Shown piece after piece: positions 183 to 60,900 of a DNA stretch of 64,000 nucleotides. Position 1 is the first letter of the stretch; each line of letters opens with the position of its first letter. A model generated the notes under the pieces. It was not told the DNA's origin, did no database searches, and worked only from the letters and a program-made list of their open reading frames with translations. This DNA is from Oculina patagonica (Eukaryota): assembly GCF_052425735.1 (NCBI RefSeq), contig NC_135768.1, positions 19,406,001 to 19,470,000 of the forward strand, in the 5' to 3' direction. Made by a program: the position numbers and the translations under genes.

Positions 183-13070
<12,888 letters not shown>

Positions 13071-41724: not shown

Positions 41725-41849
41725 CTTCGCTTTACCTCCAAATTCAATATGGCCGATCACAAAATAAATTCACGTGACAAACTGCCCTCGTTTTCACGAC
41801 AGTCCGTTTTCACCTCAATAAGCAAAAGACTGGGGCGAGTGGGAGTAAT
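41725..41849. promoter_or_regulatory. 125-bp bidirectional promoter RNASEK / SERHL copy 1 with a CLEAR-like E-box
   Basis: GTCACGTGAA (minus strand, 41769-41778) between the divergent ATGs at 41724 and 41850. Confidence 0.65.
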
Positions 41850-42777
41850 ATGGCGGACGAAGCGAGCTTCAGCAATTCTTATCAAGAAATTTCTTTTAAA
41901 GTTCCTTGGGGTGTTATTGCAGCTAAAGCATGGGGACCCGAGGACGGCAAACCTTTCCTTGGGCTTCATGGCTGGCTAGACAACGCCAACACATTTGACA
42001 AACTAGTTAGTTTGCTGCCTGAAAACATCCGCCTTATCGCTGTAGATTTCCCAGGACATGGTAAATCTTCCCAACGGTGGCCTGGAATGTCGTATTTCCC
42101 CTTTGAATATGTTGCAGATGTAAAGAAAATTGTTTCAACTGGGATGGAAAAGATTTTCGATCATAGGCCACAGTATGGGAGCTTTTGTGGCTTCCCTGTA
42201 TGCGGGGAGCTTCCCAAATGAAGTCGAGAGTCTCGTATTGCTTGACTATGGTGGATATGCAGCTTCGAAGGGAAGCAAACCCGCTGAAGTCTTAGCTAGA
42301 TATGCAACCAGAATGTCAAACGTCACTCCAAACACTCCTCGTGTTTATGAAAGCGTAGAAGCAGCGGCTGCCAAACGAGAAGTATCTCTCGATGGTAACA
42401 TTTTACGTAAAGAAGATTCGTTGCTATTGACAAAGAGAGGAACTACAGTCACCAAGGATGGCGTTATTTTTTCGCACGATCCAATCCTTAAAGGTTTTGT
42501 TTACCCGTTTTTCCCACCTCAGTCCTCTTTAAAGCTAATTCTGTCCAAGATCAAGTCTGCAGTACTGGTATTAGAAGCTACAGATGCTGTGTACATGGTT
42601 GAAGGCATCCAGGAAACTCGTAAGGAGAGGCTTGATGTCATTTGTGATCATGCAAAGTTCAAGATGTGGAAGAGTGTTCAAGGTGGTCATCATTTGCATC
42701 TTGATAATCCTGAGCAAACTGCATTAGAAATTAAACGATTTTTAGCTATTCAGAACTCACTTGATAGCAAACTGTAG
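41850..42777 (+). pseudogene. SERHL: Serine hydrolase-like alpha/beta hydrolase, copy 1, split by a 2-bp deletion (about 42135)
   Basis: ORFs 41850-42221 and 42130-42777 join. The sequence reads gtttcaactg where copy 2 has gtttctcaactg. Motifs VPWG.IAAKAWG, LHGWLDN, GHSMG and GGHHLH; ends in SKL. Could be an assembly error. Confidence 0.8.
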
Positions 42778-42820
42778 TATGTGAGTGTTGGAGGGTCTTG
42801 TAAGTCTGGCAAGGTTTGGA

Positions 42821-43295
42821 ACCCGGGTTGGGGGGGGGGGGGGGAACTCCAATATATGAGCTATATGGGTATCTGCTGCTGTGAAGGGTATGGTTTTCAA
42901 GCAGTTCAGTCTGGGATAGGGTATAGAAATCAGAGAGTTTTTGGTTAGAATAGGGTATCATTTGCCGGGAAACTGATCAGAAGTATGACAAATTAGTTTA
43001 GAATAGGAATAGAAACTCGGAAGAGAAAGAGGCTTTCCGAAACATAAATAAGATCATCGTGGCAATGTTGTTGACAGATGGCTTTTAAAAAATGCAGGTC
43101 TGGGGTAGGGTAGGGATTTTTGGTGTCTAGTCTAGTATAGGGTTGCAAAATCCAGTTTAACTCCTCTCCCCATCCTGGGGCAAACCATTGATAGGTGCAT
43201 TAGGTCTGGAACAAGGTAAGGGTTTCAAAGTCCCAGTGGCACACCCCCACCCAAAAATATACAGAGTGCCCCCTCCCCTTCCCCCTTCCCCGTGG
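42821..43295. mobile_element. CCC...GGG-ended MITE just downstream of SERHL copy 1
   Basis: Near-identical to 45640-46069, at the same position downstream of copy 2. Confidence 0.55.
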
Positions 43296-43938
43296 TTTGG
43301 AATGGCTCTTATATGATTTTACTCTTCAAGAGAACAATTAAAAAACAACAACAGGAGCATATCCTAGCCCTGCAAAAACAATTACAGCAACTGCTCCATT
43401 AGAGAACTAGTAGAATTTAGGACACAGTTGCTCCTCTACAGGCAACTGTGCTGCTGAGGGAAGACTAGGAATGAACAAAGGGGGGTAAACGAGAAAGAAT
43501 AGGAACAATAGTGCTTCCTATGGCCTTTTGTTCCTAGTCTGTAAACATGTAATATGAATGCAAACAGCAAATTGTATTTCTGAGAATTAAGAGTCATAGA
43601 TTGATTTGTGAGAATTTTATTTATTATAGACCACCTGTTCTTATACGGACAGCACAAACTGTTCTCAAATAAATATCTATCAATCTGATGGTTATCAAAA
43701 TAAATTATGAATTTTGAACATTATAATTAAATCTTCTCGAGTTTTACTTTTTACAGTCAATTTACGAAAGTACAACCCTCCAAAAGTAGTGACAAACATT
43801 ACTAACAAAATGTCGTGAGAAACAATGGTGCGTCTGACCTTCCCACTTCCTTTACCTTTAACTCCCGGTTCCTCCCTCTTTGTTCTGGTAAATCTTTTCC
43901 CGATCCCCACCACCTTGGCAATCCTTCAAGGCAATCCT

Positions 43939-44249
43939 CATTCTCGTCCCCATAGCCCTTTCGTTTCTCTTAGCCGGCTGGGCCTTGGCATGAGAAAACA
44001 AAAGGCTCTGGGGACACTGGATTCTAAGACTTCCAGTCTTCATGTATGCAGTCATGATGTTTCAAAAGAATGTATGAGAGAGTTGTTGCGTTTTTGACTT
44101 CCGTTTGGGAATTCTTTGTACAAAACTGCCAATCAAAAAAATTCGAATTAATTTTAAAATCCTTTGTCCCCAGAGCCCTTCGTTTTCTCATGCCAAGCCG
44201 GCTAAGAGCCTAAGAGAAACGAAAGCTAAGGGCTATGGGGACAAGCATG
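43939..44249. mobile_element. Palindromic MITE with 9-bp TSD (MULE or AcademH type)
   Basis: CATTCTCGTCCCCATAGCCCTT ... AAGGGCTATGGGGACAAGCATG; exact TSD GGCAATCCT at 43930-43938 and 44250-44258. Confidence 0.8.
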
Positions 44250-44657
44250 GGCAATCCTATACCCACCCCCACCCTTCACCGCGGTCAAACGTAGCACATG
44301 CGCAATGACTTTAATTCCAGTCGCCCACGGCACAAATTTCCTGCGCAAAAATTCAAAGCAAACCTATTGCAGCAACACGGTGTCACGCCAAGATGAAATT
44401 AAAACACGAGCGTGCGACAAATAACCGTAAAAAATAAGAAAAGTCGGTAAAAGATAAGGGTTTCACTTTCAAAACTTGAAGCTGGTTAGTTTTTCTACAA
44501 TTTCTGAGCTTACTAAAGTTTACTTTACGCGCTCCAATCCCGCGCATGCGTAGACGATTGACCGCGGTGGACCCACCCCAAACCGTAGTTCCCACCCCCT
44601 CTCGTTTTCACCTCAATAAGCAAAAGCAAAAGACTGGGGCGAGTGGGCGTATTCAAT

Positions 44658-45590
44658 ATGGCGGACGAAGCGAGCTTCAGCAATTCTTATCAAGAACTTT
44701 CCTTTAAAGTTCCTTGGGGTGTAATTGCAGCTAAAGCTTGCGGACCCGAGGGCGGAAAGCCTTTCCTTGGAATTCATGGCTTGTTCGACAACGCCAACAC
44801 ATTTGATAAGCTAGCTTGTTTGCTACCTAAAAACATTCGCTTTATCGCAATGGATTTCCCAGGACATGGTCAATCTTCCCACCGATGGCCTGGAATGTGG
44901 TATTTCTTCTATGAATATGTTGCAGATGTAAAGAAAGTTGTTTCTCAACTGGGATGGGAAAGGTTCTCGATCATAGCCCACAGTATGGGAGCTTTTGTGG
45001 CTTCCCTGTATGCGGGGAGCTTCCCAAATGAAGTCGAGAACCTTGTATTGATTGAGTATGGTGGATACGCGGCTTTGAGAGCAAACATACCCGCTGAAGT
45101 CTTAGCTGGATATGCAACCAAAATGTTAAACGTCACTCCAAGCACTCCTCGTGTTTATGAAAGCGTAGAAGAAGCGGCTGCCAGACGAGAAGTATCTATG
45201 GATGGTAACACTTTACGTAAAGAAGATGCGTTGCTATTGACAAAGAGAGGAACTACAGTCACTAAGGATGGCGTTATTTTTTCGCACGATCCAGTCCTCA
45301 AAGATCATATTTACCCGTTTTTGCCACCTCAGTCCTCTATAAAGCTAATTCTGTCCAAGATCAAGTCTGCAGTACTGGTATTAGAAGCTACAGATGCTGT
45401 CAGGTTGATGGTTGATGGAATGCAAGAAACTCGTAAGGAGAGGCTTGATGTCATTCTTGATCATGCAAAGTTCAAGATGTGGAAGAGAGTTCAAGGTGGT
45501 CATCATTTGCATCTTGATAATCCTGAGCAAACTGCATTAGAAATTAAACAATTTTTAGCTATTCAGAGCTCACTTGATAGCAAACTGTAG
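44658..45590 (+). CDS. SERHL: Serine hydrolase-like protein copy 2, 310 aa, intronless, PTS1 (SKL)
   Basis: VPWGVIAAKACG, IHGLFDN, DFPGHGQS, AHSMG nucleophile elbow, GGHHLHLD; start set at the MAD ATG shared by all copies. Confidence 0.9.
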   Translation: MADEASFSNSYQELSFKVPWGVIAAKACGPEGGKPFLGIHGLFDNANTFDKLACLLPKNIRFIAMDFPGHGQSSHRWPGMWYFFYEYVADVKKVVSQLGWERFSIIAHSMGAFVASLYAGSFPNEVENLVLIEYGGYAALRANIPAEVLAGYATKMLNVTPSTPRVYESVEEAAARREVSMDGNTLRKEDALLLTKRGTTVTKDGVIFSHDPVLKDHIYPFLPPQSSIKLILSKIKSAVLVLEATDAVRLMVDGMQETRKERLDVILDHAKFKMWKRVQGGHHLHLDNPEQTALEIKQFLAIQSSLDSKL

Positions 45591-45639
45591 TACATGTATG
45601 CGACTGTTGGAGGGTCTTTTAAGTCTATCAAGATTTAGA

Positions 45640-45676
45640 ACCGGGGGGAGGGGCACTCCCATATATGAACTACATG

Positions 45677-45711
<35 letters not shown>

Positions 45712-46069
45712 AGTTCAGTCTGGGATAGGGCATTCATTATATAAATCAGAGAGTTTTGGTCTAGAATAGGGTATCATTTCCTGGGAAACTGATCAGCAGT
45801 ATGACAAATTAAGTTCAGAATCGGAATAGAAACTCAGAAGAGAAAGAAGCTTTCCTATTAACGTAAATAAAATCACCGTGGCAATGTTGTTGACAGATGG
45901 TTTTCCATTAAAAACACTGATAGTGATACAGTTCTAAAAAATGCAAGTCTGGGATAAGGTAGGGATTTTTGGTGTCTGGCTGAACATGGTCTGGTACAGG
46001 GTAAGGGTTTCAAAGTCCCAGCTGCACACCCCGGCCCCGCCCAAAAATATACAGAGTGCCCCCCGGGGG
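45640..46069. mobile_element. CCC...GGG-ended MITE downstream of SERHL copy 2
   Basis: ccggggggagggcactc ... gagtgcccccccggg; paralog of 42821-43295; a related element lies at about 47136-47526. Confidence 0.6.
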
Positions 46070-48121
46070 TTTGGGATGGCTCTTATTCTTGAAGAGAACA
46101 ATTAAAAAACAACAACAGGAGCATACTCCTGGCCCTGCAAAAACAATTACAGCAAGCTGCAACTGCTGCATTAGAGAACCAGTAGAATTACAAACACGCT
46201 ACTTATGGGTACCCTAGCTAGCTTCTCCTCTGCAGCCTGCTAGACTTTCTCAAAGCCCGTTTCTGGTAGTTAGGTCATCTGGTGGAAAATGGACTTTTTT
46301 CGCCTGCATCGTGGCATTTTTTACCGACCAGTTTTCTGGTCAGCGGTGTGTCGGGGGTGTGACAACGCTGATATCCAATCAGGGAACGCAAGACGTTAAT
46401 TATCATCCGGGAAACTTGATCCTCACGAATCCTTCACTTGTTCTGTAAATGCTCTCGACGTGAGAGAAAGTTAAGAAGTGCGAAGGAAATGAACGTGAGA
46501 GAAGCTATAAACGCGGGTTAAACGAAGCTTGGTTCCAAGGAAATTCGAGAGATTCAACGAGCACAGTTTTTACAGATAATTTAGTCGAACAGCTTTCTTT
46601 GTCTAGCTTTGCACCAACGAAAATTTTTAAGTTCGCGCAAGCTGGCGACTAAGTTTGGCCCGTTTTAAAGCTTTCAGAGATAACTCTGGTTCGAATTTTT
46701 GGCTTCCACGCACAAGATACAGACTGTTTCTTTCGATTTCGGGGAAGGACTGACTCGGGAAACAGTTTGCTGGAGTCATCTCCATTCATTGTGAAATTCA
46801 CGTGTGTATACTGTCATTTGAGAAATGTTTTATATTTTTTTTATTTGAAAGCGAGAGGGCTGTCAAATTTACTTCACACCCATCACTTTTCACGCCTGCA
46901 ATATGCAAATTAAATTCAATCTCTTGCAGGCGGAACAAGTGGACTTGCATCTCGCATTTTTTTTTTCATTTCTTTTGTTTGTGTTCTGAAGGCCTAGCTA
47001 CCAAGCTGAATTTTAATATATCGAAAGAAGCCTATTGAACCAAGAAAACAATATGCTGGGAAATGGGATTTGGGCAAATTTATGGGATTTATACCTCTCA
47101 TCCCCTTCCTCCTTTTTTAGGACCCTCCTTACGGGCCCGGGGGCACTCCCATATAAGGGCTATACGGGTATGTATGCTTTTTGCCTATCTGACTCTGGAA
47201 CAGGGTATAAAAATCACCCTTTTGACTCTGGAACAGGGTCGATTTTTTTTACCAGAATCCTGATTAAACACGATCGAGTTTAGCTATGAAACTCCGCTCC
47301 TCTCATCGCTTTATCTCCGAGCCACAGACGAAGTCAAGTGAGCGCATTGTGATATACGCTACATATATTTCCATTGTGGATATTGTCTGGAACAGGGTAC
47401 CTATTTTGCAATGTTTGTCTGGAACAGGGTCGAAAATTCAGCGTTTTTTCTCTTGAACAGGTCCAGAGCCTCAGAGACTCAGCGGCACACCCCCGTAGTA
47501 AATTTTAGGGAGTATCCCCCCCCGGGCTTACGGGTAACAGGAAAGGAGAGGGTTATAAGTAAAATTGCCAAGCTGACAGGAAACAGGAAAAAAATTGCCA
47601 CATTGAACAATATTTTGAAACAGAAAGAGAACAAGGAGGATTGAACTGGGTCAGACCCACCATTGTTTCTTATGATATTTTGTTAGTTATGTTTGTTGCT
47701 ACTAGTGGTGGGTTGTACTTTCGTAACTTGGCAGTAAAAAGTCAAACTCAACAAGATTGAAGCATAATGTTCAAATTTATAGTCATAATTTATTTTGTTA
47801 GACTTACTATCAAATTGATAGATATTTATTTCAGAACAGTTTGTACTGTTTGTATATTAAAGAACAGGTGGTCTATAATAATTACTTATTCTCAGAAAAT
47901 AATTTTGCTAATTACATGATTGAAGCATACTGCAGTTGAATCCCGATAACTCGAACCTTGGAGGGAAATCCAAAAAGGTTCGAGATATTGGTAGTTTGAG
48001 TTATCGAGGGTAAAATTAGTAAGAAAACAACCTGGAGGGGAATTGGATAGTCATAATCTGTTTTGATAGACTTCTATCAGATTGATAGATATTTATTTCA
48101 GAACAGTTTGTACTGTTTGTA

Positions 48122-48451
48122 CCGTAATGATTAGATTTAGCGCCCTCCTTCCAATAAGCGCCCCCTTCCGAATAAGCACCCCCCTTCAAATGTGTTTTGT
48201 CAATAAGCGCCCCTATTCCAATAAGCACCCCCATTCTAATAAGCGCCCCCATTCTTATAAGTGCCCCTATTCTAATAAGCGCCCCTATTGTGGATAACTG
48301 CCCCTACTTAAGTCATACTTAACATTTGATTGTTTCTCAAAAAATAAATAAGCGCCCTGTCCCAAATAAGAGCCCTGTCTCGAATAAGCACCCTCCTTTG
48401 AGGTGCCAAAAAGTAAAATAAGCACCTGGGCACTAAATCGAATCATTACAG
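48122..48451. mobile_element. Tc1/mariner-type MITE with internal aataagcgcccc repeats
   Basis: TIR ccgtaatgatt...gccc / gggc...aatcattacag, TA TSD. The empty site is visible in the local duplicate at about 47840-47870. Confidence 0.8.
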
Positions 48452-48631
48452 TATATTAAAGAGCAGGTGGTCTATAATAATTATTTATTCTCAGAAAATA
48501 ATTTATGACAAATAATTATCAGAAATTCATTTTGCTATTTACAGGCATAATTGGAGCATAGTAAGTAGAGGGAGCTCATATTTGAGGAAGAATGACTATG
48601 CTTGCCTGCTGATATGTCTGTATAATGCCCA

Positions 48632-49573
48632 CTACAGCTTACTGGTGCATAAATCATGCTTGTGGGGTGCGTCAACAGCCAAGAACTTTCTGATTTCTTG
48701 AGCAGTTTGCTCAGGATTATCCAGATGTAAATGATGACCACCTTCAACTCTCTTCCACATCTTGAACTTTGCATGATCACAAATGACATTAAGCCTCTCC
48801 TTACGAGTTTCTTGAAATCCACCAGAGAACACAGTACCAGTAGCTTCTAATACCAATACTGCACACTGAATCTTGGACAGAATTAGCTTTATAGAGGACT
48901 GAGGTGGGTAAAACGGGTAAACATGGCCTTTAAGGATTGGGTCGTGCGAGAAAATAACGCCATCCTTAGTGACTGTAGTTCCTCTCTCTGTCAATAACAA
49001 CGCATCTTCCTTACGCAAAATGTTACCAGCGAAAGGCTCTTCTCTTCTGACAGCCGCTGCCTCCACACTTTCATAAACACGAGGAGTTTTTTGAATCATG
49101 TTTGACATTCTGGTTGCATATTTAGCTAAGCTTTCAGCGGGTTTGTTTGCGCGCCAAGCAGCGTATCCGCCATAGTCAAGCAATACAAGGTTCTCTACTT
49201 CAGTTGGAAAGCTCCCCGCATACAGGGAAGCCACAAAAGCCATCATACTGTGGCCTATGATCGAGAACTTTTCCCATCCCAGTTGAGTAACAACTTTCTT
49301 TATATCAGCAACATATTCGAAGTCGAGATACGACATTCCAGGCCATCGGTGGGAAGATTTACCTTGTCCTGGAAAATCCATTGCAATAAAACGGATGTTT
49401 TCAGGCAGCAAACGAGCTAGCTTGTCAAATGTGTTGGCGTTGTCTAGCCAGCCATGAAGCCCAAGGAAAGGTTTGCCGTCCTCGGGTCCCCAAGCTTTAG
49501 CTGCAATAACACCCCAAGGAACTTTAAAAGAAATTTCTTTGTAAGAATTGCTGAAGCCCGGTTCGTCCGCCAT
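48632..49573 (-). CDS. SERHL: Serine hydrolase-like protein copy 3, 313 aa, intronless, PTS1 (SKL)
   Basis: LHGWLDN, DFPGQGKS, GHSMM, GGHHLHLD, C-terminal CTSKL. Confidence 0.9.
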   Translation of the reverse strand: MADEPGFSNSYKEISFKVPWGVIAAKAWGPEDGKPFLGLHGWLDNANTFDKLARLLPENIRFIAMDFPGQGKSSHRWPGMSYLDFEYVADIKKVVTQLGWEKFSIIGHSMMAFVASLYAGSFPTEVENLVLLDYGGYAAWRANKPAESLAKYATRMSNMIQKTPRVYESVEAAAVRREEPFAGNILRKEDALLLTERGTTVTKDGVIFSHDPILKGHVYPFYPPQSSIKLILSKIQCAVLVLEATGTVFSGGFQETRKERLNVICDHAKFKMWKRVEGGHHLHLDNPEQTAQEIRKFLAVDAPHKHDLCTSKL

Positions 49574-49627
49574 TATATTGAAATTACTCCCACTCGCCCC
49601 AGTCCTGCTCAATATTGAGAGGCCGGG

Positions 49628-49939
49628 AATAGGCTAGTTTCGAATTACGCTCCACTGATCATAAACAAAAGGTTCAGGGGAATAATTTGAATTTGCTTGT
49701 TTTATTCCCCTCAGCCTCGACTTCACTCCTTTGTTTTATAGGATCAGTAGAGCGTAATTCGAAACTAGCCTATTCTCTATTTTCCAATTGCCCATAATGC
49801 ACTTTGTTTGCCCCCCAAATTTTGCATAAACTATTGTTTTGGAAATATGCAGTCCTCCCAAGAGAATTTGAAAACAATAGTTTATGCAAAATTTGGGGGG
49901 CAAACAAAGTGTATTATGGGCAATTGGAAAATAGAGAAT
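49628..49939. mobile_element. Two abutting hairpin MITEs (49628-49774 and 49772-49939) immediately upstream of copy 3
   Basis: aataggctagtttcgaattacgctc / gagcgtaattcgaaactagcctatt, and attctctattttccaattgcccataat / attatgggcaattggaaaatagagaat. Confidence 0.75.
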
Positions 49940-49991
49940 TGGGATTTGGGCAAATTTTCACTGGCAGAACGGGATTTGGGTCACTGGGACT

Positions 49992-52900
49992 CACAGGAAA
50001 AAATTCTGAAATTCCAAGTTGGACTTTTATTGGAAAATAACAAAATTAACATTCCAATATTGGAATACTATTGGAAAAACATTGGAATACTACATAATTT
50101 CTCCTGTACGATTAAGTTAGTTGGTAGATTATTGGTATATCATTCATTTAAAAATCCAACTTGGTTTTTTAATGGTAATTTATTGGGACATCATAAAATA
50201 CAACATTGGAAAACCACTGCAGTATTTGGTAGATTATTGGTTTATCAGAAATTTAACAATCCAAGTTGTTTTTCTATGGTGATTTATTGGAATATTATGT
50301 CCAGCAAGTGAAAAGTACAAAAAAATATTTATATATTTATATGAAACCATGCCAGACTGAATGCTGTACTGACTAAAATAACCCTCATCCCTCAAAGTAA
50401 TAAAAATTGTTGTAGCCTGATTGCAAAATTTGAAAAAATAAAATTACATGTACATGTATCCTTGTTTCAAGTTCCTCCATTTAAAATAGCAATTACTTTT
50501 ATGGCAAAAATGTATAAACAATCTTTCAAAACTGTGAAGACAGTTTGGTTTGTATGTGGGGTTACACGCAGTTTCAACTTCTACAAATATGCATGGCTAC
50601 TTTTGTAGTTACAGTGTACCATTTACGAACTATCACTGGAAGCTGCTGCTAAGCACTTTATATGTAGATCAATAAGGTTAGACAAAAAGGCCTCTGAATG
50701 CCACCCACATGATAAGACCTGTGGAACTGATTGCTAATCCTCTTCATCGATCCAAGAAGAATGTTCCACCTGCCAGTGACCCTTTGACAATAACAGCTAG
50801 TTAGAATCTCTTCTTCTGACGGCTGCATATCTTGTTAAATCAAGTCGATCCATTGATCGCTTTCGCCATTTACATTCTGATATTTCTTCGATACGGTAGA
50901 TACGTTATGTATGGGGAACTATTATGTCCGCAACGATACATGCACTGACCAAACGGATCGTGGGCGCCTGGTACAAGCCGCTGACTGCGCATGAGAGATT
51001 GCGCGCCATTTTTCGCGCCAAAATACTACTGTTCGACTGTTCGAGACGTCAACCAGGAGTGAAAGGAGCGGGAAAAGAAAGTCTAGAAAATTATTTCCAA
51101 ATGGCAAGTTGTTCGTCCGAAAGAGGAGACCTTTCTAGCCCAGGTAATTTTATTAATACGAGTTTCTAGTTGGTCATATAGATAAAATCGCGACGTGATG
51201 AGCTTTTTACCAATTACAAGGCACTGGTTTTTTATTTCTCGAAACTCAACGACTTGATGTAAAACGACTATGCCAGAATGGCGACAACAATCCTCAATTT
51301 TGATCAGCAAATCACTTATTACCTAAAAACTCGAGTTTACATTTATATTTAACGAAACACTTTAATTTCACAGAAGTTCTTTGACCTCGAAATCCCTGAA
51401 ATTCTCACAAAAGTCTGAAGTGCTTTTCATGCTAACTTCGGCCTTTTTGTCTGCAATATGCATATGGACATAGTGTAATTTTATCACAGAGTGATTTTAT
51501 TAGCTTTAATTTCGTATTTGTACGCTGCAGTCTGTGAGGTGACTCTTCTAGCTAGTGTAAATAGACTGTCCGGGTCAGGCTGGGCTTAACACTCAGCTAA
51601 ATTAAAAATGACCATTAACTTGAAATTTTTAAGCCCTCCGGTTCTTGTTATAATTCAGAGTTACAGTTAAATACAACAAATGAAGTGGAAAAATGGAGCC
51701 CCAGTGACATGGCCATATGTGGTTAGAGAGTGTTCAGCCTGAAATGAAAGAGGAAGCACAACTTTTGCAGAGTGAGTTGAGTTTGTGGTGGGCTCTTCAT
51801 TCTACTTTTGTCTGTTCCTGTAATTTGATGAGAAACATCCTTTATATTATTATTTAGCATATACATATAGCATTACCATTTAAGCTTATACACGATGTTT
51901 TGTTTGTGTAGAATCTGAGATATCTGGAAAAACATTAACCATGGTTGATAGGGCATGCCTCAGGGACATCAACATAACATCAGTCGGTAAACAACTGACC
52001 ATTTTGATAATTTGTAATAACTCCTTTATAGCAATTTAACCAGTATGGTAATGGCTCATATCATTATCAAGGCTGGAATTTTTAAAGCATTTCTCCAGAG
52101 CTAATTTATGCAAATGTAGCAATCTACAAGAGCAGTTCAATGACCCAATGACCAGTTTTCCATTTTTCTGATTTTTTTTTTCAGCGGCTATACGAAGCCA
52201 TATCTTACAATGGGTAAATGGAAAGAATCGGAAGTTAACTGATGGGTTTGATTTTGAGGTATGTAAAAAGTATATTTCTTTGTTACAAGCATTTACAAAT
52301 TTCTATAACATACGTACTGGCTTTATAACTACCACGATACTTCTGTTTGAACTTAAAGTGTTACATAATTGACAACTTTGTTGGTTTTTTTGCTTCAATA
52401 GAAATCAAGAATACCAGCCAAAAGGGCCATTTTAAGTGAACCAGAAATGAGCGAAGCCCTCGGTAAGTTAATGATGACAAATGAACTCATTCTTGGGCCT
52501 TAAAATGGTATCAATTTTCGCTTTCTTTATCCTTAAATAGGGTCAGGGTTTACGAACCTTAGCGGCACGCCCCTATCTGAAATTAATGGGAGTACCCCAC
52601 CCCCTGGGAGTAATCCCCCTAGTTCTGTTATTTCTATGAAATCACAAATATTGAGTAGCAGTCATTACATGTACACATGTATAAATTTTATTAAAGCTTG
52701 AATTACATCTAGATTCAGTGTCTGAATTTTAGCACATTGGATTTATCTTCTTAACATAAGTAACCTAATTCTTACTTTTTTTGCTTGCAGCCGAAACAGA
52801 TACAGAGAAACCGACAGAGACTGAAAATTCTGAAAACGTGGATGAAATATCTGATTACAGCGCACAGCTGTTATGTGCTGTAATATTTCATGTACCTGCA

Positions 52901-54120
52901 TTCAGAAATCTAAGCCTTAAAAAACACCTTGTTGAAGGTGCCAAACTACTCAAGATAAAGACACGAGGCTGTGGAAAATATGAATTGGCCAAAAAAATAG
53001 CAATTTCTCTCGTCAACGAGGTGTTTGTTCGTATTCAGGCACCAATAAACTACCGAGATTTAACAAGGGAGCAAATAATCATCATCAAAGAGCTTCAGCT
53101 GCCATCTCCACGCTCTTCATCTAACAGCAGTCCTGATCTCAGTTGTTCCTCGTCATATTCTACTGAGTCTGTGAATGAAACAGATGACTCTTTGGTGTCA
53201 GAGCCATCTGATGAGTAACACTGCTGAAAGGATAGTGGACATATATTGAAACCTGAATACTGTGTTATTGGATACTGTTGATTATCACATTAGTTTATAA
53301 CTGTGTGACATGCAAGTTACTATAAAGAGACAGTTGTTGTTCCCATTTTTTAATATTTCAATGTTTTGCAAGTGATATAACATTGGACACTGATCATTGT
53401 CACATTTGTGTGGCAGCATAAGAAAGGAGTCAGTTATTGTTCATGTTGGATTTTTTTTACCACTTTTAAGTGATAATAATTTAATTATTACATTGGAAAT
53501 GTGTTTTTATAGCATTTCTGGTCATGTCTACAGTGGCAATATTATTACAAGTAACAGAATAGTCCCTAAATATTAAAAGTGACCTTTATTATCATAGCTT
53601 TGACATTTTCTTAAGCAACTTTCACTGCTGGACACTGTAAAGCAATAACCAACCTTGGTTATGCTCATTACAGTGCAGGACAATTTTAAGAATAACCAAC
53701 ATTGGTAACAATCCTTCCCAAGCTGGAACCTCAAGAAAAAATCCAACCTTGATAATGCACTTTCCAATGTTGGGCAATTATTTTTAAGAATAACCAACCT
53801 TGGTAATGCTTTCTACAATGTTGGACAATTTTAAGATTAACCAACATTGGTAATGCTCTTTCCCAAGTTGGAACATCTAGAAAAACTCCAATCTTGGTAT
53901 TGCTCTTTCCAATGTTGGAAACTCTTTTAAGAAATACCAACATTGGAAATTCAAAATAGATTCCCAACCTTGGATTCCTATATATGACTTACCAATGTTG
54001 GAAAGTGTATCTCTTTTCCCAAAATTGGTAAACTTACTAATTTTCCACTAAATTCCCAATGTTTTACCGAAAAATAACCAATGTTTCCCCAAATTTGGAA
54101 TCTCAGAATTTTTTCCTGTG
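49992..54120 (+). mobile_element. CACTA/EnSpm-like (CMC) non-autonomous element, 4129 bp
   Basis: TIR CACAGGAAAAAATTCTGA(A/G)ATTCCAA; exact 3-bp TSD ACT (49989-49991, 54121-54123). An empty site of the host repeat is at about 57980-58000. Subterminal ccaac(a/c)ttgg repeats are present; no transposase was seen. Confidence 0.8.
51101..53218 (+). pseudogene. Six-exon SAM-domain gene inside the CACTA-like element (51101-51143, 51659-51771, 51912-52013, 52185-52258, 52402-52462, 52791-53218), with one 2-nt frameshift
   Basis: Exon phases are consistent except for a TG duplication at about 51718. The restored protein VEKWSPSDMAI-WLESVQPEMKEEAQLLQKSEISGKTLTMVDRACLRDINITSVGKQLTIL fits the SAM consensus. 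Confidence 0.6.
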
Positions 54121-54947
54121 ACTGGGAATCGAAAACAAATAAACAATAGAACTGGGATACGGATTTGGAAAATCGAGAAAACTATGCTGGGAAATGGGAT
54201 TTGGGCAAAATGTGGGCTGAGAAATGGGATTTATACCCCCCTTCATTATGCATTCCTTCTCTTCAGGACCCCCTGAAGAGAAGAGTTCGTCCAAACCCGA
54301 CATTGTAGACACATTGCCTGCGACTGACAGCGAAGGCTTGCTAGAAACTACACCTTGAGCCACCGTCAAAATATCGGTCTTTGTAATAGAATCAACTGCA
54401 GTGGTGACCTACGGGTACCAAGAGAGGAGAGAGGTGGCTGGAATCGGGGAAAAAGATTGCCACATTATAACAATAGAAAGAGAAAAATTAATTAGGACTG
54501 ATGGAACTGGCTCAGACCTACCATTGTTTGTTATGACATTATGTGAGTTGTGTTTGTCACTAATTTTGGAGGATGGTACTTACAAGTCACTATTAATATC
54601 CCAGGGGGGTACTCAGGATTTGAAGTGACGGGGATGATCGCATTGGGGCAAAAGTCAAGACCCCCAAAAAATCCCTAGGGCTCTAAACAAAACCCCAAAA
54701 AATCCCTGTACCAAAAATCAACCCCCCAAAAAATCCCATGCCAAATTTCTGACCCATTAAATTTTTCAGAAAAGGGGAATCATCTGAAGATATAACACAA
54801 AGAAAACATTAGAAACACGTTCAGTGTTTGTATTTTATTCGCAGAACTATGCGGCCAAGGCACTACCACGAATCTTTAGATTGTTTTTAATACCAAAAAA
54901 ATCCCTACTTAAATCAAGCCACCCAAAAAAATACTTGGCAAATTTTC

Positions 54948-56453
54948 GAGATATGTCCAGAAATGCACGCAATGACGAAAATGACGAATTTGGCGAAATT
55001 TCACCAAAGTCTAAGATTTGAGCGAACGAGCTCGAGAGGGGGGTACCACGAAAGCGGCGAATTCGACGAAAACGACGAATTCGACGAAAATGATGAATTT
55101 GGCGAAATTTCGCCAAAGTCTAAGATTTGAGCGAACGAGCTCGAGAGGAGGGGTACCACGAAAGCGGCGAATTCGACGAAAACGACGAATTCGATGAAAA
55201 TGACGAATTTGGCGAAATTTTGCCAAAGTCTAAGATTTGAGCGAACGAGCTCGAGAGGAGGGGTACCACGAAAGCGGCGAATTCGACGAAAACGACGAAT
55301 TCGACGAAAATGATGAATTTGGCGAAATTTCGCCAAGTCTAAGATTTGAGCGAACGAGCTCGAGAGGAGGGGTACCACGAAAGCGGCGAATTCGACGAAA
55401 ACAACAAATTCGACGAAAATGACGAATTTGGCGAAATTTCGCCAAAGTCTAAGATTTGAGCGAACGAGCTCGAGAGGAGGGGTACCACGAAAGCGGCGAA
55501 TTCGACGAAAACGACTAATTCGACGAAAATGACGAATTTGGCGAAATTTCGCCAAAGTCTAAGATTTGAGCGAACGAGCTCGAGAGGAGGGGTACCACGA
55601 AAGCGGCGAATTCGACGAAAACGACGAATTCGACAAAAATGACGAATTTGGCGAAATTTCGCCAAAGTCTAAGATTTGAGCGAACGAGCTCGAGAGGAGG
55701 GGTACCACGAAAGCGGCGAATTCGACGAAAACGACGAATTCGATGAAAATGACGAATTTGGCGAAATTTCGCCAAAGTCTAAGATTTGAGCGAACGAGCT
55801 CGAGAGGAGAAGTACCACGAAAGCGGAGAATTCGACGAAAATGATGAATTTGGCGAAATTTCACCAAAGTCTAAGATTTGAGCGAACGAGCTCGAGAGGG
55901 GGGGTACCACGAAAGCGGCGAATTCGACGAAAACGACGAATTCGACGAAAATGATGAATTTGGCGAAATTTCGCCAAAGTCTAAGATTTGAGCGAACGAG
56001 CTCGAGAGGAGGGGTACCACGAAAGCGGCGAATTCGACGAAAACGACGAATTCGACGAAAATGATGAATTTGGCGAAATTTCGCCAAAGTCTAAGATTTG
56101 AGCGAACGAGCTCGAGAGGAGGGGTACCACGAAAGCGTCAGCACTGCATGGGTTGAGTTAAATGACATAACTTTGCTGGCTTGACGAATTTGACAAAATT
56201 TCGTCGAATTCGTCATTTTCGTCAAATTCGTCAGCACTGCATGGGTTGAGTTAAATGACATAACTTTGCTGTCTTGACGAATTTGACGAAATTTCGTCGA
56301 ATTCGTCAATTTCGTCAAATTCGTCAGCACTGCATGGGTTGAGTTAAATGACATAACTTTGCTGGCTTGACAAATTTGACGAAATTTCGTCAAATGACGA
56401 ATTTGACGAAATTTCGTCATTTTCGTCGTTGCGTGCATTTCTGGACATAAGTG
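54948..56453. mobile_element. Foldback/MULE-like TIR element with 8-bp TSD, filled with tandem repeats
   Basis: Inverted ends tatgtccagaaatgcacgcaa.gacgaaaatgacgaa; exact TSD AAATTTTC at 54940-54947 and 56454-56461. Confidence 0.7.
54975..56136. repeat. 110-bp tandem repeat, about 11 near-identical units (one 109 bp, one 92 bp), followed by a 93-bp repeat x3 (56137-56400)
   Basis: Unit gaaagcggcgaattcgacgaaaacgacgaattcgacgaaaatgatgaatttggcgaaatttcgccaaagtctaagatttgagcgaacgagctcgagaggaggggtaccac recurs at 55050, 55160, 55270, 55379, 55489, 55599, 55709, 55819, 55911, 56021 and 56131 (last one truncated). Confidence 0.95.
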
Positions 56454-56931
56454 AAATTTTCCTACCCAAAAAAATCCCGAAATCAAAAATTTCAAACCCC
56501 AAAAAATCCTTCGATCATCCCCGTCACTTGAAATCCTGAGTACCCTCCTGGGATTATTATTACGTTTCATTCTTGTCGATTTTGACTTTTTACTGTCAAC
56601 TTGACAGTAAAAAGTGACTTATAGTGACTATCATAATTTATAGTGACTATCATAATAATATTTATAGTGACTATCACAATTTATAGTGACTATCATAATT
56701 TATTTTGATAACCATCGAATTGACAGATATTTATTTGAGAACAGTTTGTACTGTATGTATAAGAACACATGGTCTACAAAAATTAATTTTATTTTCAGAA
56801 AATAATTTATGACTTATTATTCTCAGTAATTCATTTTGCTAATTACATGATTGGGGCATAGTTAGTAGAGGGAGCTCATATGCGATGAAGAATGGCTATG
56901 CTTGTCTCCTGATGTGTCTGTTTTATGCCCA

Positions 56932-57876
56932 CTATAGCTTACTGGTGCATGAGTCATGATTGTGGGATGAGACACGAGCTAAGAAGTTTTTAATTTCTTG
57001 TGCAGTTTGCTCAGGATTATCCAGATGTAAATGATGACCACTTTTGATACTCTTCCACATCTTGAACTTTGCATGATCACAAATGACATTAAGCCTCTCC
57101 TTCTCAGTCTCTTGATGTCCGTCAAACATGTACACAGTATCTGTAGCTTCTAATACCAGTACTGCAGACTGAATCTTGGACATAATTAGCTTTAAAGAGG
57201 ACTGAGGTGGGAAAAACGGAAAAACAAGAGCGTTAAGGATTGGATCGTGCGACAAAATAACACCATCCTTGGTGACTTTAGTTCCTCTCTTTGCCAATAA
57301 CAACGAATCTTCTTTACGTAAAGTGTTACCATCAAGAGATACTTCTCGTTTGGCGGCCGCTGCTTCTACGCTTTCATAAACACGAGGAGTTTTTTCATTC
57401 ATGTTTGACATCTTAGTTGCATATCTAGCTAAGACTTTAGCAGGTTTGTTTGCACTCGAAGCAGGGTAGCCACGATAATCAATCAGCACCAGATTCTCGA
57501 CTTCATTTGGGAAGCTCCCCGCATACAGGCAAGCTAAAGAAGCTCCCATACTGTGGCCTATGATCGAGAACCTTTCCCATCCCAGTTGAGAAACAACTTT
57601 CTTTACGTCAGCAACATATTCGAAGTGGATATATGGCATTCCAGGCCATCGGTGGGAAGATTGACCATGTCCTGGAAAATCTACAGCGATAAAGCGAATG
57701 TTTTCAGGCAGCAAACCAGCTAGCTTGTCAAATGTGTTGGCGTTGTCTAGCCAGCCATGAAGCCCAAGAAAAGGCTTGCCGTCCTCAGGTCCCCAAGCTT
57801 TAGCTGCAATAACACCCCAAGGAGCTTTAAAAGAAATTTCTTTATAAGAATTGCTGAAGCCCGGTTCGTCCGCCAT
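56932..57876 (-). CDS. SERHL: Serine hydrolase-like protein copy 4, 314 aa, intronless, PTS1 (SKL)
   Basis: LHGWLDN, DFPGHGQS, GHSMG, SGHHLHLD, C-terminal CTSKL. Confidence 0.9.
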   Translation of the reverse strand: MADEPGFSNSYKEISFKAPWGVIAAKAWGPEDGKPFLGLHGWLDNANTFDKLAGLLPENIRFIAVDFPGHGQSSHRWPGMPYIHFEYVADVKKVVSQLGWERFSIIGHSMGASLACLYAGSFPNEVENLVLIDYRGYPASSANKPAKVLARYATKMSNMNEKTPRVYESVEAAAAKREVSLDGNTLRKEDSLLLAKRGTKVTKDGVILSHDPILNALVFPFFPPQSSLKLIMSKIQSAVLVLEATDTVYMFDGHQETEKERLNVICDHAKFKMWKSIKSGHHLHLDNPEQTAQEIKNFLARVSSHNHDSCTSKL

Positions 57877-58389
57877 ATTGAAATTTTTCCCACTCGCCCC
57901 AGTCTTCTGGTTATTGAGATGGTGGAAAGGGGTAAAATGTATAGATTTGGGCAAATTTTCACTGGGAAAGTGAAATTTGGGTCACTGGAACCGGGAATCG
58001 CAAACAAATCAGCAATAGAACGAGCACTGGGATTTGGAAAATTAGGAAAACAATAGGCTTGGAAATGGGACTTGGCAAAATTTGGGCTGGGAAATTGGAT
58101 TTATAACCCCCTCCCCTTATGGGTAACAAGAGAGGAGAGAGAAGAGGGCTATATATAAGTAGGAGTGCCAAGGTGGTAGGAATCTGAAAAAATTTGTCAC
58201 ATTGCATAATATCTTACAATGAAAAAATATATAAAGAGGCTGGAACCGTGAGTAACAGGTACTGAAGTGGGAAGGTTAGACGCACCATTGATTCTCACAA
58301 CATTTTGTTAGTAATGTTTGTACTCCTTTTGGAGGGTTGTACTTTTGTAACTTGACACTAAAAATTAACCTTGAGAAGATTGAAACATA

Positions 58390-58730
58390 CTGTGAATGAT
58401 CGATTAAGCCCCGCTACTCGATTAAGCACCGCACTCAAATAAGCGCAGAACCTTTACCGAAAATAATTTAATAAGCACCACCCTCGAATAAGCGCCGCAG
58501 CCCTACTTTGAGTATTTACAAAGAGACTGTGAAACTGTGTTCATGTTACCTCTTGTATTTCATTCGAAATAATTTTATATTAAATTGTGCATACCTAGTG
58601 TGTGCCCTTAGTGTTTTACTGTTAGTTGAAGTAAGTACCGCTCTTGAATAAGCGCCTCTCTCGAATAGCCGCTGCACGTTTAACAGGGAAAACCAAATAG
58701 GTGTCCCTGCGCTTAATCGGTCATTTACGG
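58390..58730. mobile_element. Tc1/mariner-type MITE
   Basis: ctgtgaatgatcgattaagc / gcttaatcggtcatttacgg, TA TSD; empty site (gcaTAatgttcaa) in the paralogous spacer at about 47762. Confidence 0.75.
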
Positions 58731-58962
58731 TAATGTTCAATAGTCATAATTTATTTTGATAACTATCAGATTGATAGATATATTATTTGAGAACAGTTTG
58801 AATAGCTTGTACAAGAACAGGTGATCTGTGATAATTTATTCTCAGAAAATAATTTGACTATTGTAATTATTTTCAGAAATTAATTTTGGCAATTACATGA
58901 TTGGGGCATAGTTAGTAGAGGGAGCTCATATGTGAGGAAGAATGGCTATGCTTGTCTCCTAA

Positions 58963-59457
58963 TGCATCAGTCAATTCCAGCAGTGCCCATCCCCCCGCCC
59001 CGGGCAACCGTGGGGCATTTCCTAATGTTGCCCATCCCGAGGGTGGGGCATTTGCGTACCTCGGGTTGACCCCCGGGCATTTGACACGTGCTTTCAAAAC
59101 CGTGGAGTGAGTCGCGTATTCGTGACAAAGGCGTTTATAGGCCAAGACGTGGACTATGTTGCAGATTAGTTAGTTCATGAAGGACTAGAGAAGCTCGTGG
59201 ATGTTCGTGGATGTTTTTAAAGGTATATTTTCTCAATTTTAGATATTTCTTCATTGCTAAGAAGCAACAACTTGTATTATATTCTTATATCACATATCAA
59301 GATATTGAAAACAATCAACCCGGGAGCGGGGCATTTGCCCGGTTCCTTCATCCCCACCCCGGGGAATTTTCCAATTTTTTTTAAAGAAATGCTAATGCCT
59401 GGGGGTTAGCCCAGGGGGGGAGGGGGGGCATGGGCACTGCTGGAATTGACTGATGCA
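58963..59457. mobile_element. PIF/Harbinger-type MITE inserted about 22 nt after the stop of copy 5
   Basis: Perfect TIR tgcatcagtcaattccagcagtgcccat; TAA TSD (58960-58962, 59458-59460); empty site behind copy 4 (about 56910). Confidence 0.85.
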
Positions 59458-59479
59458 TAATGGGTCTGTTTTATGCCCA

Positions 59480-60424
59480 CTATAGCTTACTGGTGCATGA
59501 GTCATGATTGTGCGATGAGACACAAGCTAAGAAGTTTTTAATTTCTTGTGCAGTTTGCTCAGGATTATCCAGATGTAAATGATGACCACTTTTGATACTC
59601 TTCCACATCTTGAACTTTGCATGATCACAAATGACATTAAGCCTCTCCTTATGAGTTTCTTGATCTCCGTCAAACATGTACACAGTATCTGTAGCTTCTA
59701 ATACCAGTACTGCACACTGGATCTTGGAGAATATGAGCTTTAAAGAGGACTGAGGTGGCAAAAACGGAAAAACAAGAGCTTTATGGATTGGATCGTGCGA
59801 AAAAATAACGCCATCCTTAGTGACTGTAGTTCCTCGCTTTGTCAATAACAACGAATCTTCTTTACGTAAAGTGTTACCATCAAGAGATACTTCTCGTCTG
59901 ACAGCCGCTGCTTCTACGCTTTCATAAACACGAGGAGTTCTTGGATTCATGTTTGACATTCTAGTTGCATATTTAGCTAAGCCTTTAGCAGGTTTGTTTG
60001 CGCTCAAAGCAGGGGGTCCACCATAATCAAGCAATACGAGACTCTCGACTTCATTTGGGAAGCTCCCCGCATACAGGGAAGCCACAAAAGCTCCCATACT
60101 GTGGGCTATGATCGAGAACTTTTCCCATCCCAGTTGAGAAACAACTTTCTTGACATCAGCAACATATTCAAAGTGATGATACGGCATTCCAGGCCATCGG
60201 TGGGAAGATTTACCATGTCCTGGGAAATCCATTGCAATAAAGCGGATGTTTTCAGGCAGCAAACGAGCTAGCTTGTCAAATGTGTTGGCGTTGTCTAGCC
60301 AGCCATGAAGCCCAAGGAAAGGCTTGCCGTCCTCGGGTCCCCAAGCTTTAGCTGCAATTACACCCCAAGGAGCATTAAAAGAAATTTCTTTGCAAGAATT
60401 GCTAAACCTCTTTTTGTCCGCCAT
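59480..60424 (-). CDS. SERHL: Serine hydrolase-like protein copy 5, 314 aa, intronless, PTS1 (SKL)
   Basis: LHGWLDN, DFPGHGKS, AHSMG, SGHHLHLD, C-terminal CTSKL. Confidence 0.9.
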   Translation of the reverse strand: MADKKRFSNSCKEISFNAPWGVIAAKAWGPEDGKPFLGLHGWLDNANTFDKLARLLPENIRFIAMDFPGHGKSSHRWPGMPYHHFEYVADVKKVVSQLGWEKFSIIAHSMGAFVASLYAGSFPNEVESLVLLDYGGPPALSANKPAKGLAKYATRMSNMNPRTPRVYESVEAAAVRREVSLDGNTLRKEDSLLLTKRGTTVTKDGVIFSHDPIHKALVFPFLPPQSSLKLIFSKIQCAVLVLEATDTVYMFDGDQETHKERLNVICDHAKFKMWKSIKSGHHLHLDNPEQTAQEIKNFLACVSSHNHDSCTSKL

Positions 60425-60558
60425 ATTGAAATTACACCCACTCGCCCCAGTCTTCTGCTTATTGACATGAAAACGAGAGGCTTGGGAACTACGGATTATA
60501 GAAAGGGAGAGGGCTAGGGGTGGCGCGCAAACAAACCCGCTACAGTCTTTATAGATAG

Positions 60559-60900
60559 ATATGCTACCAGAACGTCAAACATCAATCTAAAAGCTCCTCG
60601 TGTTTATAAAAGCGTTAAGGCAGCGGCTGTCAGACGAGAAAGACCTTTCGATGGTAACAATTTATGCAAGGAAGATGCGTTGTTATTGACAGAGGGAGGA
60701 ACAACAGTCATCAACTGATGGTTGTTATTTTTTCGCACGATCCAATCCTTAAAGGTCTTTTTCACCCGTTTATTGTATCTCGATGGCCTTCGAAGTTAAT
60801 TCTTTCGAAGATTCAGTTTGCAGTGTTGGTATTAGAAGGAACAGATAGTCGGGTACACAAGAATGTTAAAGACGAAGAATTGAAACCCGGAAGGAAAGGG
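60559..60900 (+). pseudogene. Internal fragment of a sixth SERHL copy
   Basis: YATRTSNINLKAPRVYKSVKAAAVRRERPFDGNNLCKEDALLLTEGGTTV / VIFSHDPILKGLFHPF...KLILSKIQFAVLVLEGTD. It has a frameshift and lacks the N-terminal half and the catalytic His. Confidence 0.85.

What the first reader, a model, noticed from the sequence alone, without database searches (positions are those of the whole stretch)
41850..60900. Expanding array of intronless peroxisomal SERHL/kraken hydrolases: candidate lineage-specific metabolic or detoxification system
Seen: six copies in 19 kb (orientation ++---+), four intact, single-exon amid genes with up to 19 exons. Established: SERHL is a low-copy, multi-exon, peroxisome-associated alpha/beta hydrolase of unknown substrate in mammals, and the Drosophila relative kraken is linked to detoxification. 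Inference: a retroposed gene underwent tandem and inverted duplication with birth-and-death turnover, creating a panel of peroxisomal esterases or thioesterases, possibly acting on symbiont-, diet- or microbe-derived compounds. I know of no description of such an array, but could not search.
Basis: partly seen in the sequence, partly recalled or inferred. Interest (0 to 1): 0.8.

Follow-up and report, generated by a model that had tools for sequence, protein, structure and literature searches.

The report
Tandem SERHL hydrolase genes in coral
A stony coral carries five full-length copies and one fragment of an old, intron-free, peroxisome-tagged serine hydrolase gene (SERHL) at the gene's ancestral position; this is a real but fairly ordinary local gene-family expansion that recurs in other corals, not a recently retroposed gene.

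Summary
There are six SERHL-like alpha/beta-hydrolase copies at 41850-60849, oriented ++---+. Four are intact, one has a 2-bp frameshift and one is a fragment. All full copies end in -SKL, and these are the only close copies in the 529-Mb genome.

- **Not a recent retrogene.** The orthologues in Nematostella, Actinia and Desmophyllum are also single-exon. They lie beside the same neighbour, V-ATPase subunit f, which sits head-to-head with copy c1 here. The genome holds no multi-exon parent, and no copy has a poly(A) remnant.
- **Local duplication and turnover are supported.** Copies are 86-92% identical in DNA, with dS 0.14-0.32 and dN/dS 0.34-0.58. Copies cluster by genome, and dS within the genome is lower than dS to the nearest other coral (0.34-0.43). 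Some mosaic identity points to gene conversion.
- **Not unique to this coral.** At least four other anthozoan-like contigs carry 3-5 tandem copies. One set has an intron in at least two of its three copies, which argues for DNA-level duplication.

The catalytic Ser109, Asp/Glu133 and His281 are kept in all copies. Differences concentrate in the cap domain. Probable-RNA contigs cover c4 and c5 but not the fragment. The substrate is unknown, and I found no paper on coral SERHL arrays. Interest is modest.

The parts
40219..41733 (-). Exons of the V-ATPase subunit f gene (tblastn blocks at about 40219-40305, 41411-41506 and 41632-41733). This is the conserved neighbour of SERHL in Hexacorallia and lies head-to-head with c1.
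   Evidence: Six-frame pieces of the Desmophyllum (L015) and Actinia (L013) V-ATPase_su_f genes match here. The same neighbour is annotated beside SERHL in Nematostella, Actinia and Desmophyllum.
41790..41849 (+). Upstream element of about 60 bp (...CGTTTTCACCTCAAT..AAGACTGGGGCGAGTGGG..) present before all five full copies and before copies in other corals. It is probably the core promoter or 5'UTR and marks the 5' limit of the duplicated unit.
   Evidence: Upstream alignments within the window and across L011, L014 and L015. Further upstream, c1 alone matches Desmophyllum and the first copy of coral B, including a TCACGTGAC motif.
41850..42777 (+). c1, the SERHL copy at the ancestral position. 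It has a 2-bp deletion after 42134 that shifts the frame; otherwise it is full-length and ends in -SKL.
   Evidence: I could not check the frameshift against reads.
44658..45590 (+). c2, intact, 310 aa. The acid residue is Glu133. It deviates at the conserved positions W28C and W42L.
48632..49573 (-). c3, intact ORF, 313 aa. The nucleophile elbow reads GHSMM instead of GHSMG, and it also carries H70Q.
56932..57876 (-). c4, intact, 314 aa.
   Evidence: Probable-RNA contigs cover the CDS.
58765..59479 (-). Probable 3'UTR of c5.
   Evidence: Probable-RNA contigs cover it while the neighbouring spacer is empty. AATAAA/ATTAAA signals lie at +640 and +725 from the stop codon.
59480..60424 (-). c5, intact, 314 aa. 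It was the query for all searches and for the structure model.
60527..60849 (+). c6, a pseudogene fragment (residues about 142-247) with a frame change and a TGA. It lacks both the start and the end of the gene.
   Evidence: No probable-RNA contigs lie on 60426-60727, and only a trace on 60728-60878 in one run.

Best explanation
This is the ancestral hexacorallian SERHL locus. SERHL here is a peroxisome-targeted alpha/beta-hydrolase with a Ser109 / Asp(Glu)133 / His281 triad and a C-terminal -SKL. Its coding region was already intronless in the common ancestor of sea anemones and stony corals. In this coral lineage a unit of about 1.3-2 kb (a 60-bp upstream element, the CDS and the 3'UTR) was copied locally at the DNA level, in direct and inverted orientation. 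That produced five full-length genes and one fragment. Occasional gene conversion and birth-and-death turnover followed. The paralogues remain under purifying but relaxed selection and differ mainly in the cap domain and the loop after beta7. They therefore most likely form a small panel of peroxisomal esterases, thioesterases or lipases with shifted substrate ranges. The anatomy, ancestry, duplication pattern and selection regime are shown. Peroxisomal import, catalysis and substrate class are inferred.
For: Family and fold:
- Pfam hits to Abhydrolase_1/Abhydrolase_6/Hydrolase_4.
- The nearest named proteins are 'serine hydrolase-like protein 2' of Desmophyllum (73%), Acropora (59%), Actinia, Nematostella and vertebrates (35-41%).
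- The cnidarian clade has 97% SH-aLRT support.
- The AF2 model has pLDDT 91.5, with a cap at about 135-225.
- The closest solved structures are PA1622 and the CurM thioesterase.

Catalytic residues: S109, H281 and H284 are invariant in 81 homologues. Position 133 is Asp or Glu in 80 of 81 and aligns with a Glu of the CurM thioesterase after strand beta6.

PTS1: -SKL in nearly all coral sequences and in Actinia, -CKL in Nematostella, -ARL/-SQL/-SRL in vertebrates, and none in the bacterial relatives.

Ancestral intronless locus:
- Single-exon genes beside V-ATPase subunit f in Nematostella, Actinia and Desmophyllum.
- The same neighbour lies next to c1, and c1 shares upstream sequence with Desmophyllum and coral B.
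- Xenopus SERHL2 has at least 9 coding exons.

Local duplication:
- All close copies lie in this array.
- The tree joins c1+c2 (98) and c4+c5 (96), and copies cluster by genome.
- dS is 0.14-0.32 within the window, 0.34-0.43 to coral A and 0.57-0.65 to Desmophyllum.
- A related coral contig has three tandem copies; two carry the same 500-bp intron, and the first exon of the third falls off the fetched stretch.

Selection: dN/dS is 0.34-0.58. Variable sites cluster at residues 131-165, 171-185, 206-225 and 241-259.

Expression: probable-RNA contigs cover c4 and c5 but not the spacers or c6.
Against: - Gene conversion is visible: over nt 1-150, c1-c3 and c3-c4 are 97% identical against 86-87% overall. 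Clustering by genome may therefore overstate how recent the duplications are.
- The clade holding all five window copies has only 82% support. It dissolves into a polytomy with coral A when c1 is left out.
- Homology between copies is confined roughly to the transcribed unit, -60 bp to about 1 kb 3'. mRNA-derived copies would also look like this.
- Every copy carries one or two changes at positions that are at least 85% conserved in the family, including G111M in the nucleophile elbow of c3. Some 'intact' copies may be decaying rather than specialising.
- The runs used for expression are only guessed to be RNA. One poly(A) raw-read run from a related organism gave nothing.
- c1-c3 expression, the c1 frameshift, localisation and activity were not tested.
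Confidence: 0.72

Rival explanations
1. An old array, present since early robust-clade corals, is kept uniform within each genome by gene conversion. The within-genome clustering would then reflect concerted evolution rather than separate recent duplications.
For: Arrays at what looks like the same locus in several corals. Copies cluster by genome in every species. Identity is mosaic, with 97% stretches at the 5' end between copies that are otherwise 86-87% identical.
Against: Copy number and orientation differ between genomes: ++---+ here, and all copies on the same strand in corals A and B. Desmophyllum shows one full copy plus a partial one. Spacers between copies are unrelated. Pairwise dS ranges smoothly from 0.14 to 0.32, and adjacent pairs are the most similar, as stepwise duplication predicts.
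Confidence: 0.2
2. This is the first reader's reading: a retroposed (mRNA-derived) SERHL copy seeded the array, or the copies themselves arose by retroposition.
For: The coding regions are intronless while Xenopus SERHL2 has at least 9 coding exons. Homology between copies is limited roughly to the transcribed unit. A very old retroposition before the split of anemones and corals cannot be excluded.
Against: Two anemones and Desmophyllum share the same single-exon state and the same neighbour gene. The genome has no multi-exon parent. No A-rich tract lies within 1.5 kb 3' of any copy. Retrocopies would scatter across the genome rather than cluster at the parent locus. In a related coral contig the tandem copies carry an intron.
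Confidence: 0.06
3. The array is an assembly artefact: uncollapsed haplotypes or a misassembled repeat.
For: None beyond the general risk. The c1 frameshift lies in a short TCTC context and was not checked against reads.
Against: Copies differ by 8-14% in DNA, with different spacers and orientations. Independent assemblies of other corals show similar arrays. Separate contigs from public runs match c4 and c5 specifically at 99% or better.
Confidence: 0.02

Closest known systems
Vertebrate SERHL/SERHL2 (serine hydrolase-like protein)
   Same: Same family by best named hits and by tree (35-41% identity). Same length of about 300-315 aa, the same GHSMG nucleophile motif and invariant histidines, and a PTS1-like C-terminus.
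   Different: The vertebrate gene is multi-exon (Xenopus: at least 9 coding exons over 9 kb). Here the gene is intronless and amplified to five full copies plus a fragment. From my own knowledge, humans have SERHL2 plus a SERHL pseudogene; I did not check this here.
Drosophila Kraken
   Same: A putative serine hydrolase usually treated as the fly SERHL relative. It is active in activity-based profiling, and mutants are more sensitive to octanoic acid (PMC13568702). A preprint lists fly SERHL2 homologues among monoacylglycerol-metabolising enzymes (10.1101/2025.09.10.674993).
   Different: The paper does not mention peroxisomes. Kraken is not described as part of an array.
PA1622 of Pseudomonas aeruginosa (PDB 7AL5/7AL6) and the CurM thioesterase domain (PDB 3QIT)
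   Same: These are the closest solved structures. PA1622: E 5e-40, 32% identity, TM 0.87-0.89. CurM thioesterase: TM 0.83-0.86. Both share the fold, the cap placement and an acid residue after strand beta6.
   Different: Both are bacterial and lack PTS1. PA1622 has no assigned function. The CurM thioesterase is a domain of a polyketide synthase acting on acyl-ACP. Neither defines the coral substrate.
Single-copy SERHL of Nematostella, Actinia and Desmophyllum
   Same: Intronless, next to V-ATPase subunit f, with an -SKL or -CKL ending.
   Different: Within the 6-10 kb of flank fetched on each side there is one copy, plus a partial second in Desmophyllum, against six here. Whole genomes of these species were not searched.

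Membership tests
SERHL family (alpha/beta-hydrolase, Abhydrolase_1 type) | Alpha/beta-hydrolase fold with a cap domain | tested here: met
   Pfam PF00561, PF12697 and PF12146 at E 1e-8 to 1e-21 for the four intact copies, weaker (E up to 4e-3) for the two pieces of c1. AF2 model pLDDT 91.5. Foldseek finds alpha/beta hydrolases only.
SERHL family (alpha/beta-hydrolase, Abhydrolase_1 type) | GXSXG nucleophile elbow with the catalytic Ser | tested here: met
   GHSMG in c1, c2, c4 and c5. c3 reads GHSMM: the Ser is kept but the last Gly is lost.
SERHL family (alpha/beta-hydrolase, Abhydrolase_1 type) | Catalytic His and acid residue | tested here: inconclusive
   H281 is invariant, and position 133 is Asp or Glu in 80 of 81 homologues and in all window copies. 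The assignment rests on alignment to 3QIT and on my recollection of its triad. I could not measure the geometry because no coordinates are returned.
SERHL family (alpha/beta-hydrolase, Abhydrolase_1 type) | Groups with named SERHL/SERHL2 proteins rather than other hydrolase families | tested here: met
   All named hits are SERHL/SERHL2 apart from one bacterial alpha/beta hydrolase and one fusion protein named after its phosphatase part. The cnidarian clade has 97% support. The bacterial group is separate (99%), but its position relative to the two eukaryote groups is unresolved.
Peroxisomal matrix protein (PTS1 cargo) | C-terminal tripeptide of the (S/A/C)-(K/R/H)-(L/M) type | tested here: met
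   -SKL in all five full copies and in nearly all coral and anemone homologues.
Peroxisomal matrix protein (PTS1 cargo) | Import into peroxisomes by PEX5 | not testable with these tools
   Needs localisation experiments.
Processed retrogene | Intron-bearing parent gene elsewhere in the same genome | tested here: not met
   The exon-by-exon six-frame search of the 529-Mb genome finds no other SERHL. The next hits are 31% identical.
Processed retrogene | New genomic position relative to the orthologue in outgroups | tested here: not met
   The V-ATPase subunit f neighbour is the same as in Nematostella, Actinia and Desmophyllum.
Processed retrogene | Poly(A) remnant at the 3' end, with flanking target-site duplications | tested here: not met
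   No window with at least 13 A in 15 bases lies within 1.5 kb 3' of any copy. I did not search for target-site duplications.
Drosophila kraken orthologue | Reciprocal best hit or tree placement with Kraken | not tested

The most novel reading that the evidence does not exclude
Peroxisomal SERHL has been amplified repeatedly and independently in reef-building corals: here, in corals A and B, and in a complex-clade-like coral. The three anthozoans with a single full copy in the fetched locus (Nematostella, Actinia, Desmophyllum) do not host algal symbionts, by my own knowledge. The cap-domain divergence would then reflect adaptation to a lipid or fatty-acid-derived substrate stream from symbionts or diet, parallel to kraken's role in octanoic acid tolerance in flies.
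Probability: 0.12. Interest if true: 0.6.

Novelty: new member of a known kind. Interest (0 to 1): 0.33.

Why it matters
SERHL is a conserved animal enzyme whose substrate is still unknown. A natural panel of recently diverged paralogues whose differences sit in the cap domain could help find what the enzyme acts on. If the amplification tracks symbiosis or diet across cnidarians, it would point to a peroxisomal lipid-handling step that matters in corals. As it stands, this is a local expansion of a known hydrolase family.

Tried and rejected
- **Pfam search for the neighbour gene.** The own-genome search with PF23489 (V-ATPase_su_f) found nothing, and nothing in the control genomes either, because the exons are short. 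I replaced it with tblastn of six-frame pieces from the Desmophyllum and Actinia flanks.
- **Acropora gene structure.** The Acropora millepora protein P0037 is not on record. I read gene structure for that clade from an unnamed related contig instead.
- **Cluster names.** A look-up for ten unnamed relatives returned only one name, a shark, so most deep relatives stay unidentified.
- **Literature.** Searches for SERHL plus coral, for 'serine hydrolase-like protein' plus cnidaria, and for the PDB codes 7AL5/7AL6 found nothing relevant.
- **Bacterial origin of the cnidarian genes.** I considered this because bacterial homologues are 33-37% identical, close to the vertebrate value. The tree shows a separate bacterial clade (99%) and an unresolved three-way split, and PTS1 is shared by both eukaryote groups. 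There is no positive evidence for transfer.
- **An ancestral intron.** The single intron in the complex-clade-like coral lies at codon 51, phase 2. Xenopus intron 1 lies at about codon 59, phase 1. They are not the same site.
- **Poly(A) raw reads.** Run X36, from a related organism, gave only 7 partial reads, on repeats. This is uninformative.
Full report
**1. What is in the sequence**

ORF listing and tblastn with one copy find six SERHL-like units, oriented ++---+:

| Copy | Coordinates | Strand | State |
|---|---|---|---|
| c1 | 41850-42777 | + | 2-bp frameshift, otherwise full-length |
| c2 | 44658-45590 | + | intact, 310 aa |
| c3 | 48632-49573 | - | intact, 313 aa |
| c4 | 56932-57876 | - | intact, 314 aa |
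| c5 | 59480-60424 | - | intact, 314 aa |
| c6 | 60527-60849 | + | fragment, residues about 142-247 |

- c1 is broken by a 2-bp deletion after 42134: GTTGTT--TCAACTGG against GTTGTTTCTCAACTGG in the other copies. The rest of c1 stays in frame to -SKL.
- c6 has a frame change and a TGA, and lacks both ends of the gene.
- The four intact copies hit Pfam Abhydrolase_1, Abhydrolase_6 and Hydrolase_4 at E 1e-8 to 1e-21.
- The window is G000:C11:19406001-19470000 of a 529-Mb assembly. A six-frame search of the whole genome finds every close copy inside this array. The next hits, on contig C4, are 31% identical.
- The copies are 86-92% identical in DNA, and the spacers between them are unrelated. They are paralogues, not haplotypes.

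**2. Whose gene it is**

- The nearest named proteins are 'serine hydrolase-like protein 2' of Desmophyllum pertusum (73%) and Acropora millepora (59%).
- Next come SERHL of Actinia tenebrosa and SERHL2 of Nematostella (38-39%) and vertebrate SERHL2 (35-41%).
- Bacterial alpha/beta hydrolases reach 33-37%.
- The genome is therefore a stony coral of the robust clade.
- A tree of 81 homologues gives a cnidarian clade (97% SH-aLRT) and a bacterial clade (99%). A looser third group holds the vertebrates, and the three-way split is unresolved.
- PTS1-like C-termini occur in both eukaryote groups and not in the bacterial one. They are -SKL in nearly all corals and in Actinia, -CKL in Nematostella, and -ARL/-SQL/-SRL in vertebrates.
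- Nothing positively supports a bacterial origin for the cnidarian genes.

**3. The intronless state and the locus are ancestral**

- The Nematostella gene spans 945 bp for 314 aa. The Actinia gene spans 936 bp for 311 aa. The Desmophyllum gene spans 924 bp for 307 aa. All three are single-exon, and all lie next to the V-ATPase subunit f gene.
- Six-frame pieces of the Desmophyllum and Actinia neighbour genes match the window at about 40219-40305, 41411-41506 and 41632-41733 on the minus strand. That places the neighbour head-to-head with c1.
- Adaptin exons further upstream in Desmophyllum also match the window near 26.7-27.5 kb.
- c1 shares upstream sequence, including TCACGTGAC, with Desmophyllum and with the first copy of another coral.
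- Xenopus SERHL2 has at least 9 coding exons over 9 kb.
- The genome holds no multi-exon parent, and no A-rich tail lies within 1.5 kb 3' of any copy.
- The retrogene reading therefore fails for this lineage. Only a very old intron loss or retroposition, before anemones and corals split, remains possible.

**4. How the array grew**

- All five full copies share a 60-bp upstream element that is also conserved across coral species. They also share the CDS and up to about 1 kb of 3' sequence.
- The tree joins c1 with c2 (98) and c4 with c5 (96), and the copies of each genome cluster together.
- Synonymous divergence:

| Comparison | dS |
|---|---|
| within the window | 0.14-0.32 |
| within coral A | 0.16-0.20 |
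| within coral B | 0.08-0.11 |
| window to coral A | 0.34-0.43 |
| window to Desmophyllum | 0.57-0.65 |
| window to coral B | 0.72-0.94 |

- Other contigs carry arrays too. Coral A has four copies plus a split one. Coral B has five copies with a Pao retroelement between them. A complex-clade-like coral has three. An unidentified relative at 44% identity has four to five.
- In the complex-clade-like coral, two of the three tandem copies show the same 500-bp intron at codon 51; the first exon of the third lies outside the fetched stretch. This argues for DNA-level duplication there. The intron site differs from Xenopus intron 1.
- Identity along the gene is mosaic. Over nt 1-150, c1-c3 and c3-c4 are 97% identical against 86-87% overall. 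Some gene conversion therefore occurs, and the ages of the duplications are uncertain.

**5. What the proteins look like**

- The AF2 model of c5 is confident (pLDDT 91.5) and shows a cap at about residues 135-225.
- The closest solved structures are the uncharacterised PA1622 of P. aeruginosa (E 5e-40, TM 0.87-0.89) and the CurM thioesterase (TM 0.83-0.86).
- S109, H281 and H284 are invariant in 81 homologues. Position 133 is Asp or Glu in 80 of 81 and aligns with a Glu of CurM. Naming that Glu as the triad acid rests on my memory of the CurM structure.
- All window copies keep these residues.
- Each copy also deviates at one or two otherwise conserved positions (c1 read by eye from the alignment):

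| Copy | Deviation |
|---|---|
| c1 | H75Q |
| c2 | W28C, W42L |
| c3 | H70Q, G111M |
| c4, c5 | G279S |

- dN/dS is 0.34-0.58.
- Variable positions cluster at residues 131-165, 171-185 and 206-225 in the cap, at 241-259 after beta7, and in the tail before -SKL.
- This fits either relaxed constraint or shifts in the substrate pocket.

**6. Expression**

- Contigs from three public runs guessed to be RNA cover the c4 CDS. They also cover the c5 CDS and about 700 bp 3' of it.
- They leave most of the spacers and c6 empty. Pieces at 99% identity or better lie on both genes.
- Poly(A) signals at +640 and +725 fit the c5 3' end.
- This pattern suggests that at least two copies are transcribed, but the RNA label is a guess.
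- A poly(A) raw-read run from a related organism gave nothing usable.
- I could not test c1-c3.

**7. Function**

- The substrate is unknown for the whole family.
- Drosophila kraken is a putative serine hydrolase that is active in activity-based profiling and contributes to octanoic acid tolerance (PMC13568702).
- A preprint lists fly SERHL2 homologues among monoacylglycerol-metabolising enzymes (10.1101/2025.09.10.674993).
- Together with PTS1 and the structural likeness to a thioesterase, the most likely role is a peroxisomal esterase, thioesterase or lipase acting on lipid-type substrates. This is inference, and I did not test kraken orthology.

**8. Verdict**

The array is real and I found no description of it. 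It is a local expansion of a known enzyme family at its ancestral locus, and similar arrays recur in other anthozoans. The retroposition story is not supported, and the symbiosis or detoxification story is untested.

Noticed in passing
window 41550-41800; L015 about 9890-10000; L014 about 1290-1400: The shared upstream region between V-ATPase subunit f and the first SERHL copy holds a conserved TCACGTGAC (an E-box of the CACGTG type) in this coral, in Desmophyllum and in coral B. From memory it resembles the TFEB/CLEAR motif of lysosomal genes. The other window copies (c2-c5) lack it.
   Followed up: partly
window 54974-56395: A large tandem repeat lies between c3 and c4: a 110/220-bp unit in about 5-8 copies at 93-97% identity (54974-56137), followed by a 93-bp unit in 2.8 copies (56136-56395). 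It creates spurious long ORFs on the minus strand.
   Followed up: partly
L018 3975-5408 and 9406-10762: In a complex-clade-like coral contig, the SERHL copies whose 5' end is in the fetched stretch have one intron of about 500 bp at codon 51 (phase 2). Robust corals, anemones and Xenopus have no intron at that site, so this is probably an intron gain.
   Followed up: yes
L016 4940-12875: An unidentified organism (44% identical to the coral proteins, 50% to P0066) carries four to five tandem single-ORF SERHL-like copies on a 155-kb metagenome contig. One copy is split.
   Followed up: partly
G000:C4:10680258-10687756 (L008, L010): Two alpha/beta-hydrolase open frames about 7 kb apart are 31% identical to SERHL over residues 35-140. 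They probably belong to a different hydrolase family, also duplicated in tandem.
   Followed up: no
L014 12717-18020: A 1767-aa Pao-type retrotransposon ORF (gag-protease, integrase) sits inside the SERHL array of coral B.
   Followed up: no
window 48202-48306: An 18-bp tandem repeat of about 5-6 copies lies just 3' of c3.
   Followed up: no
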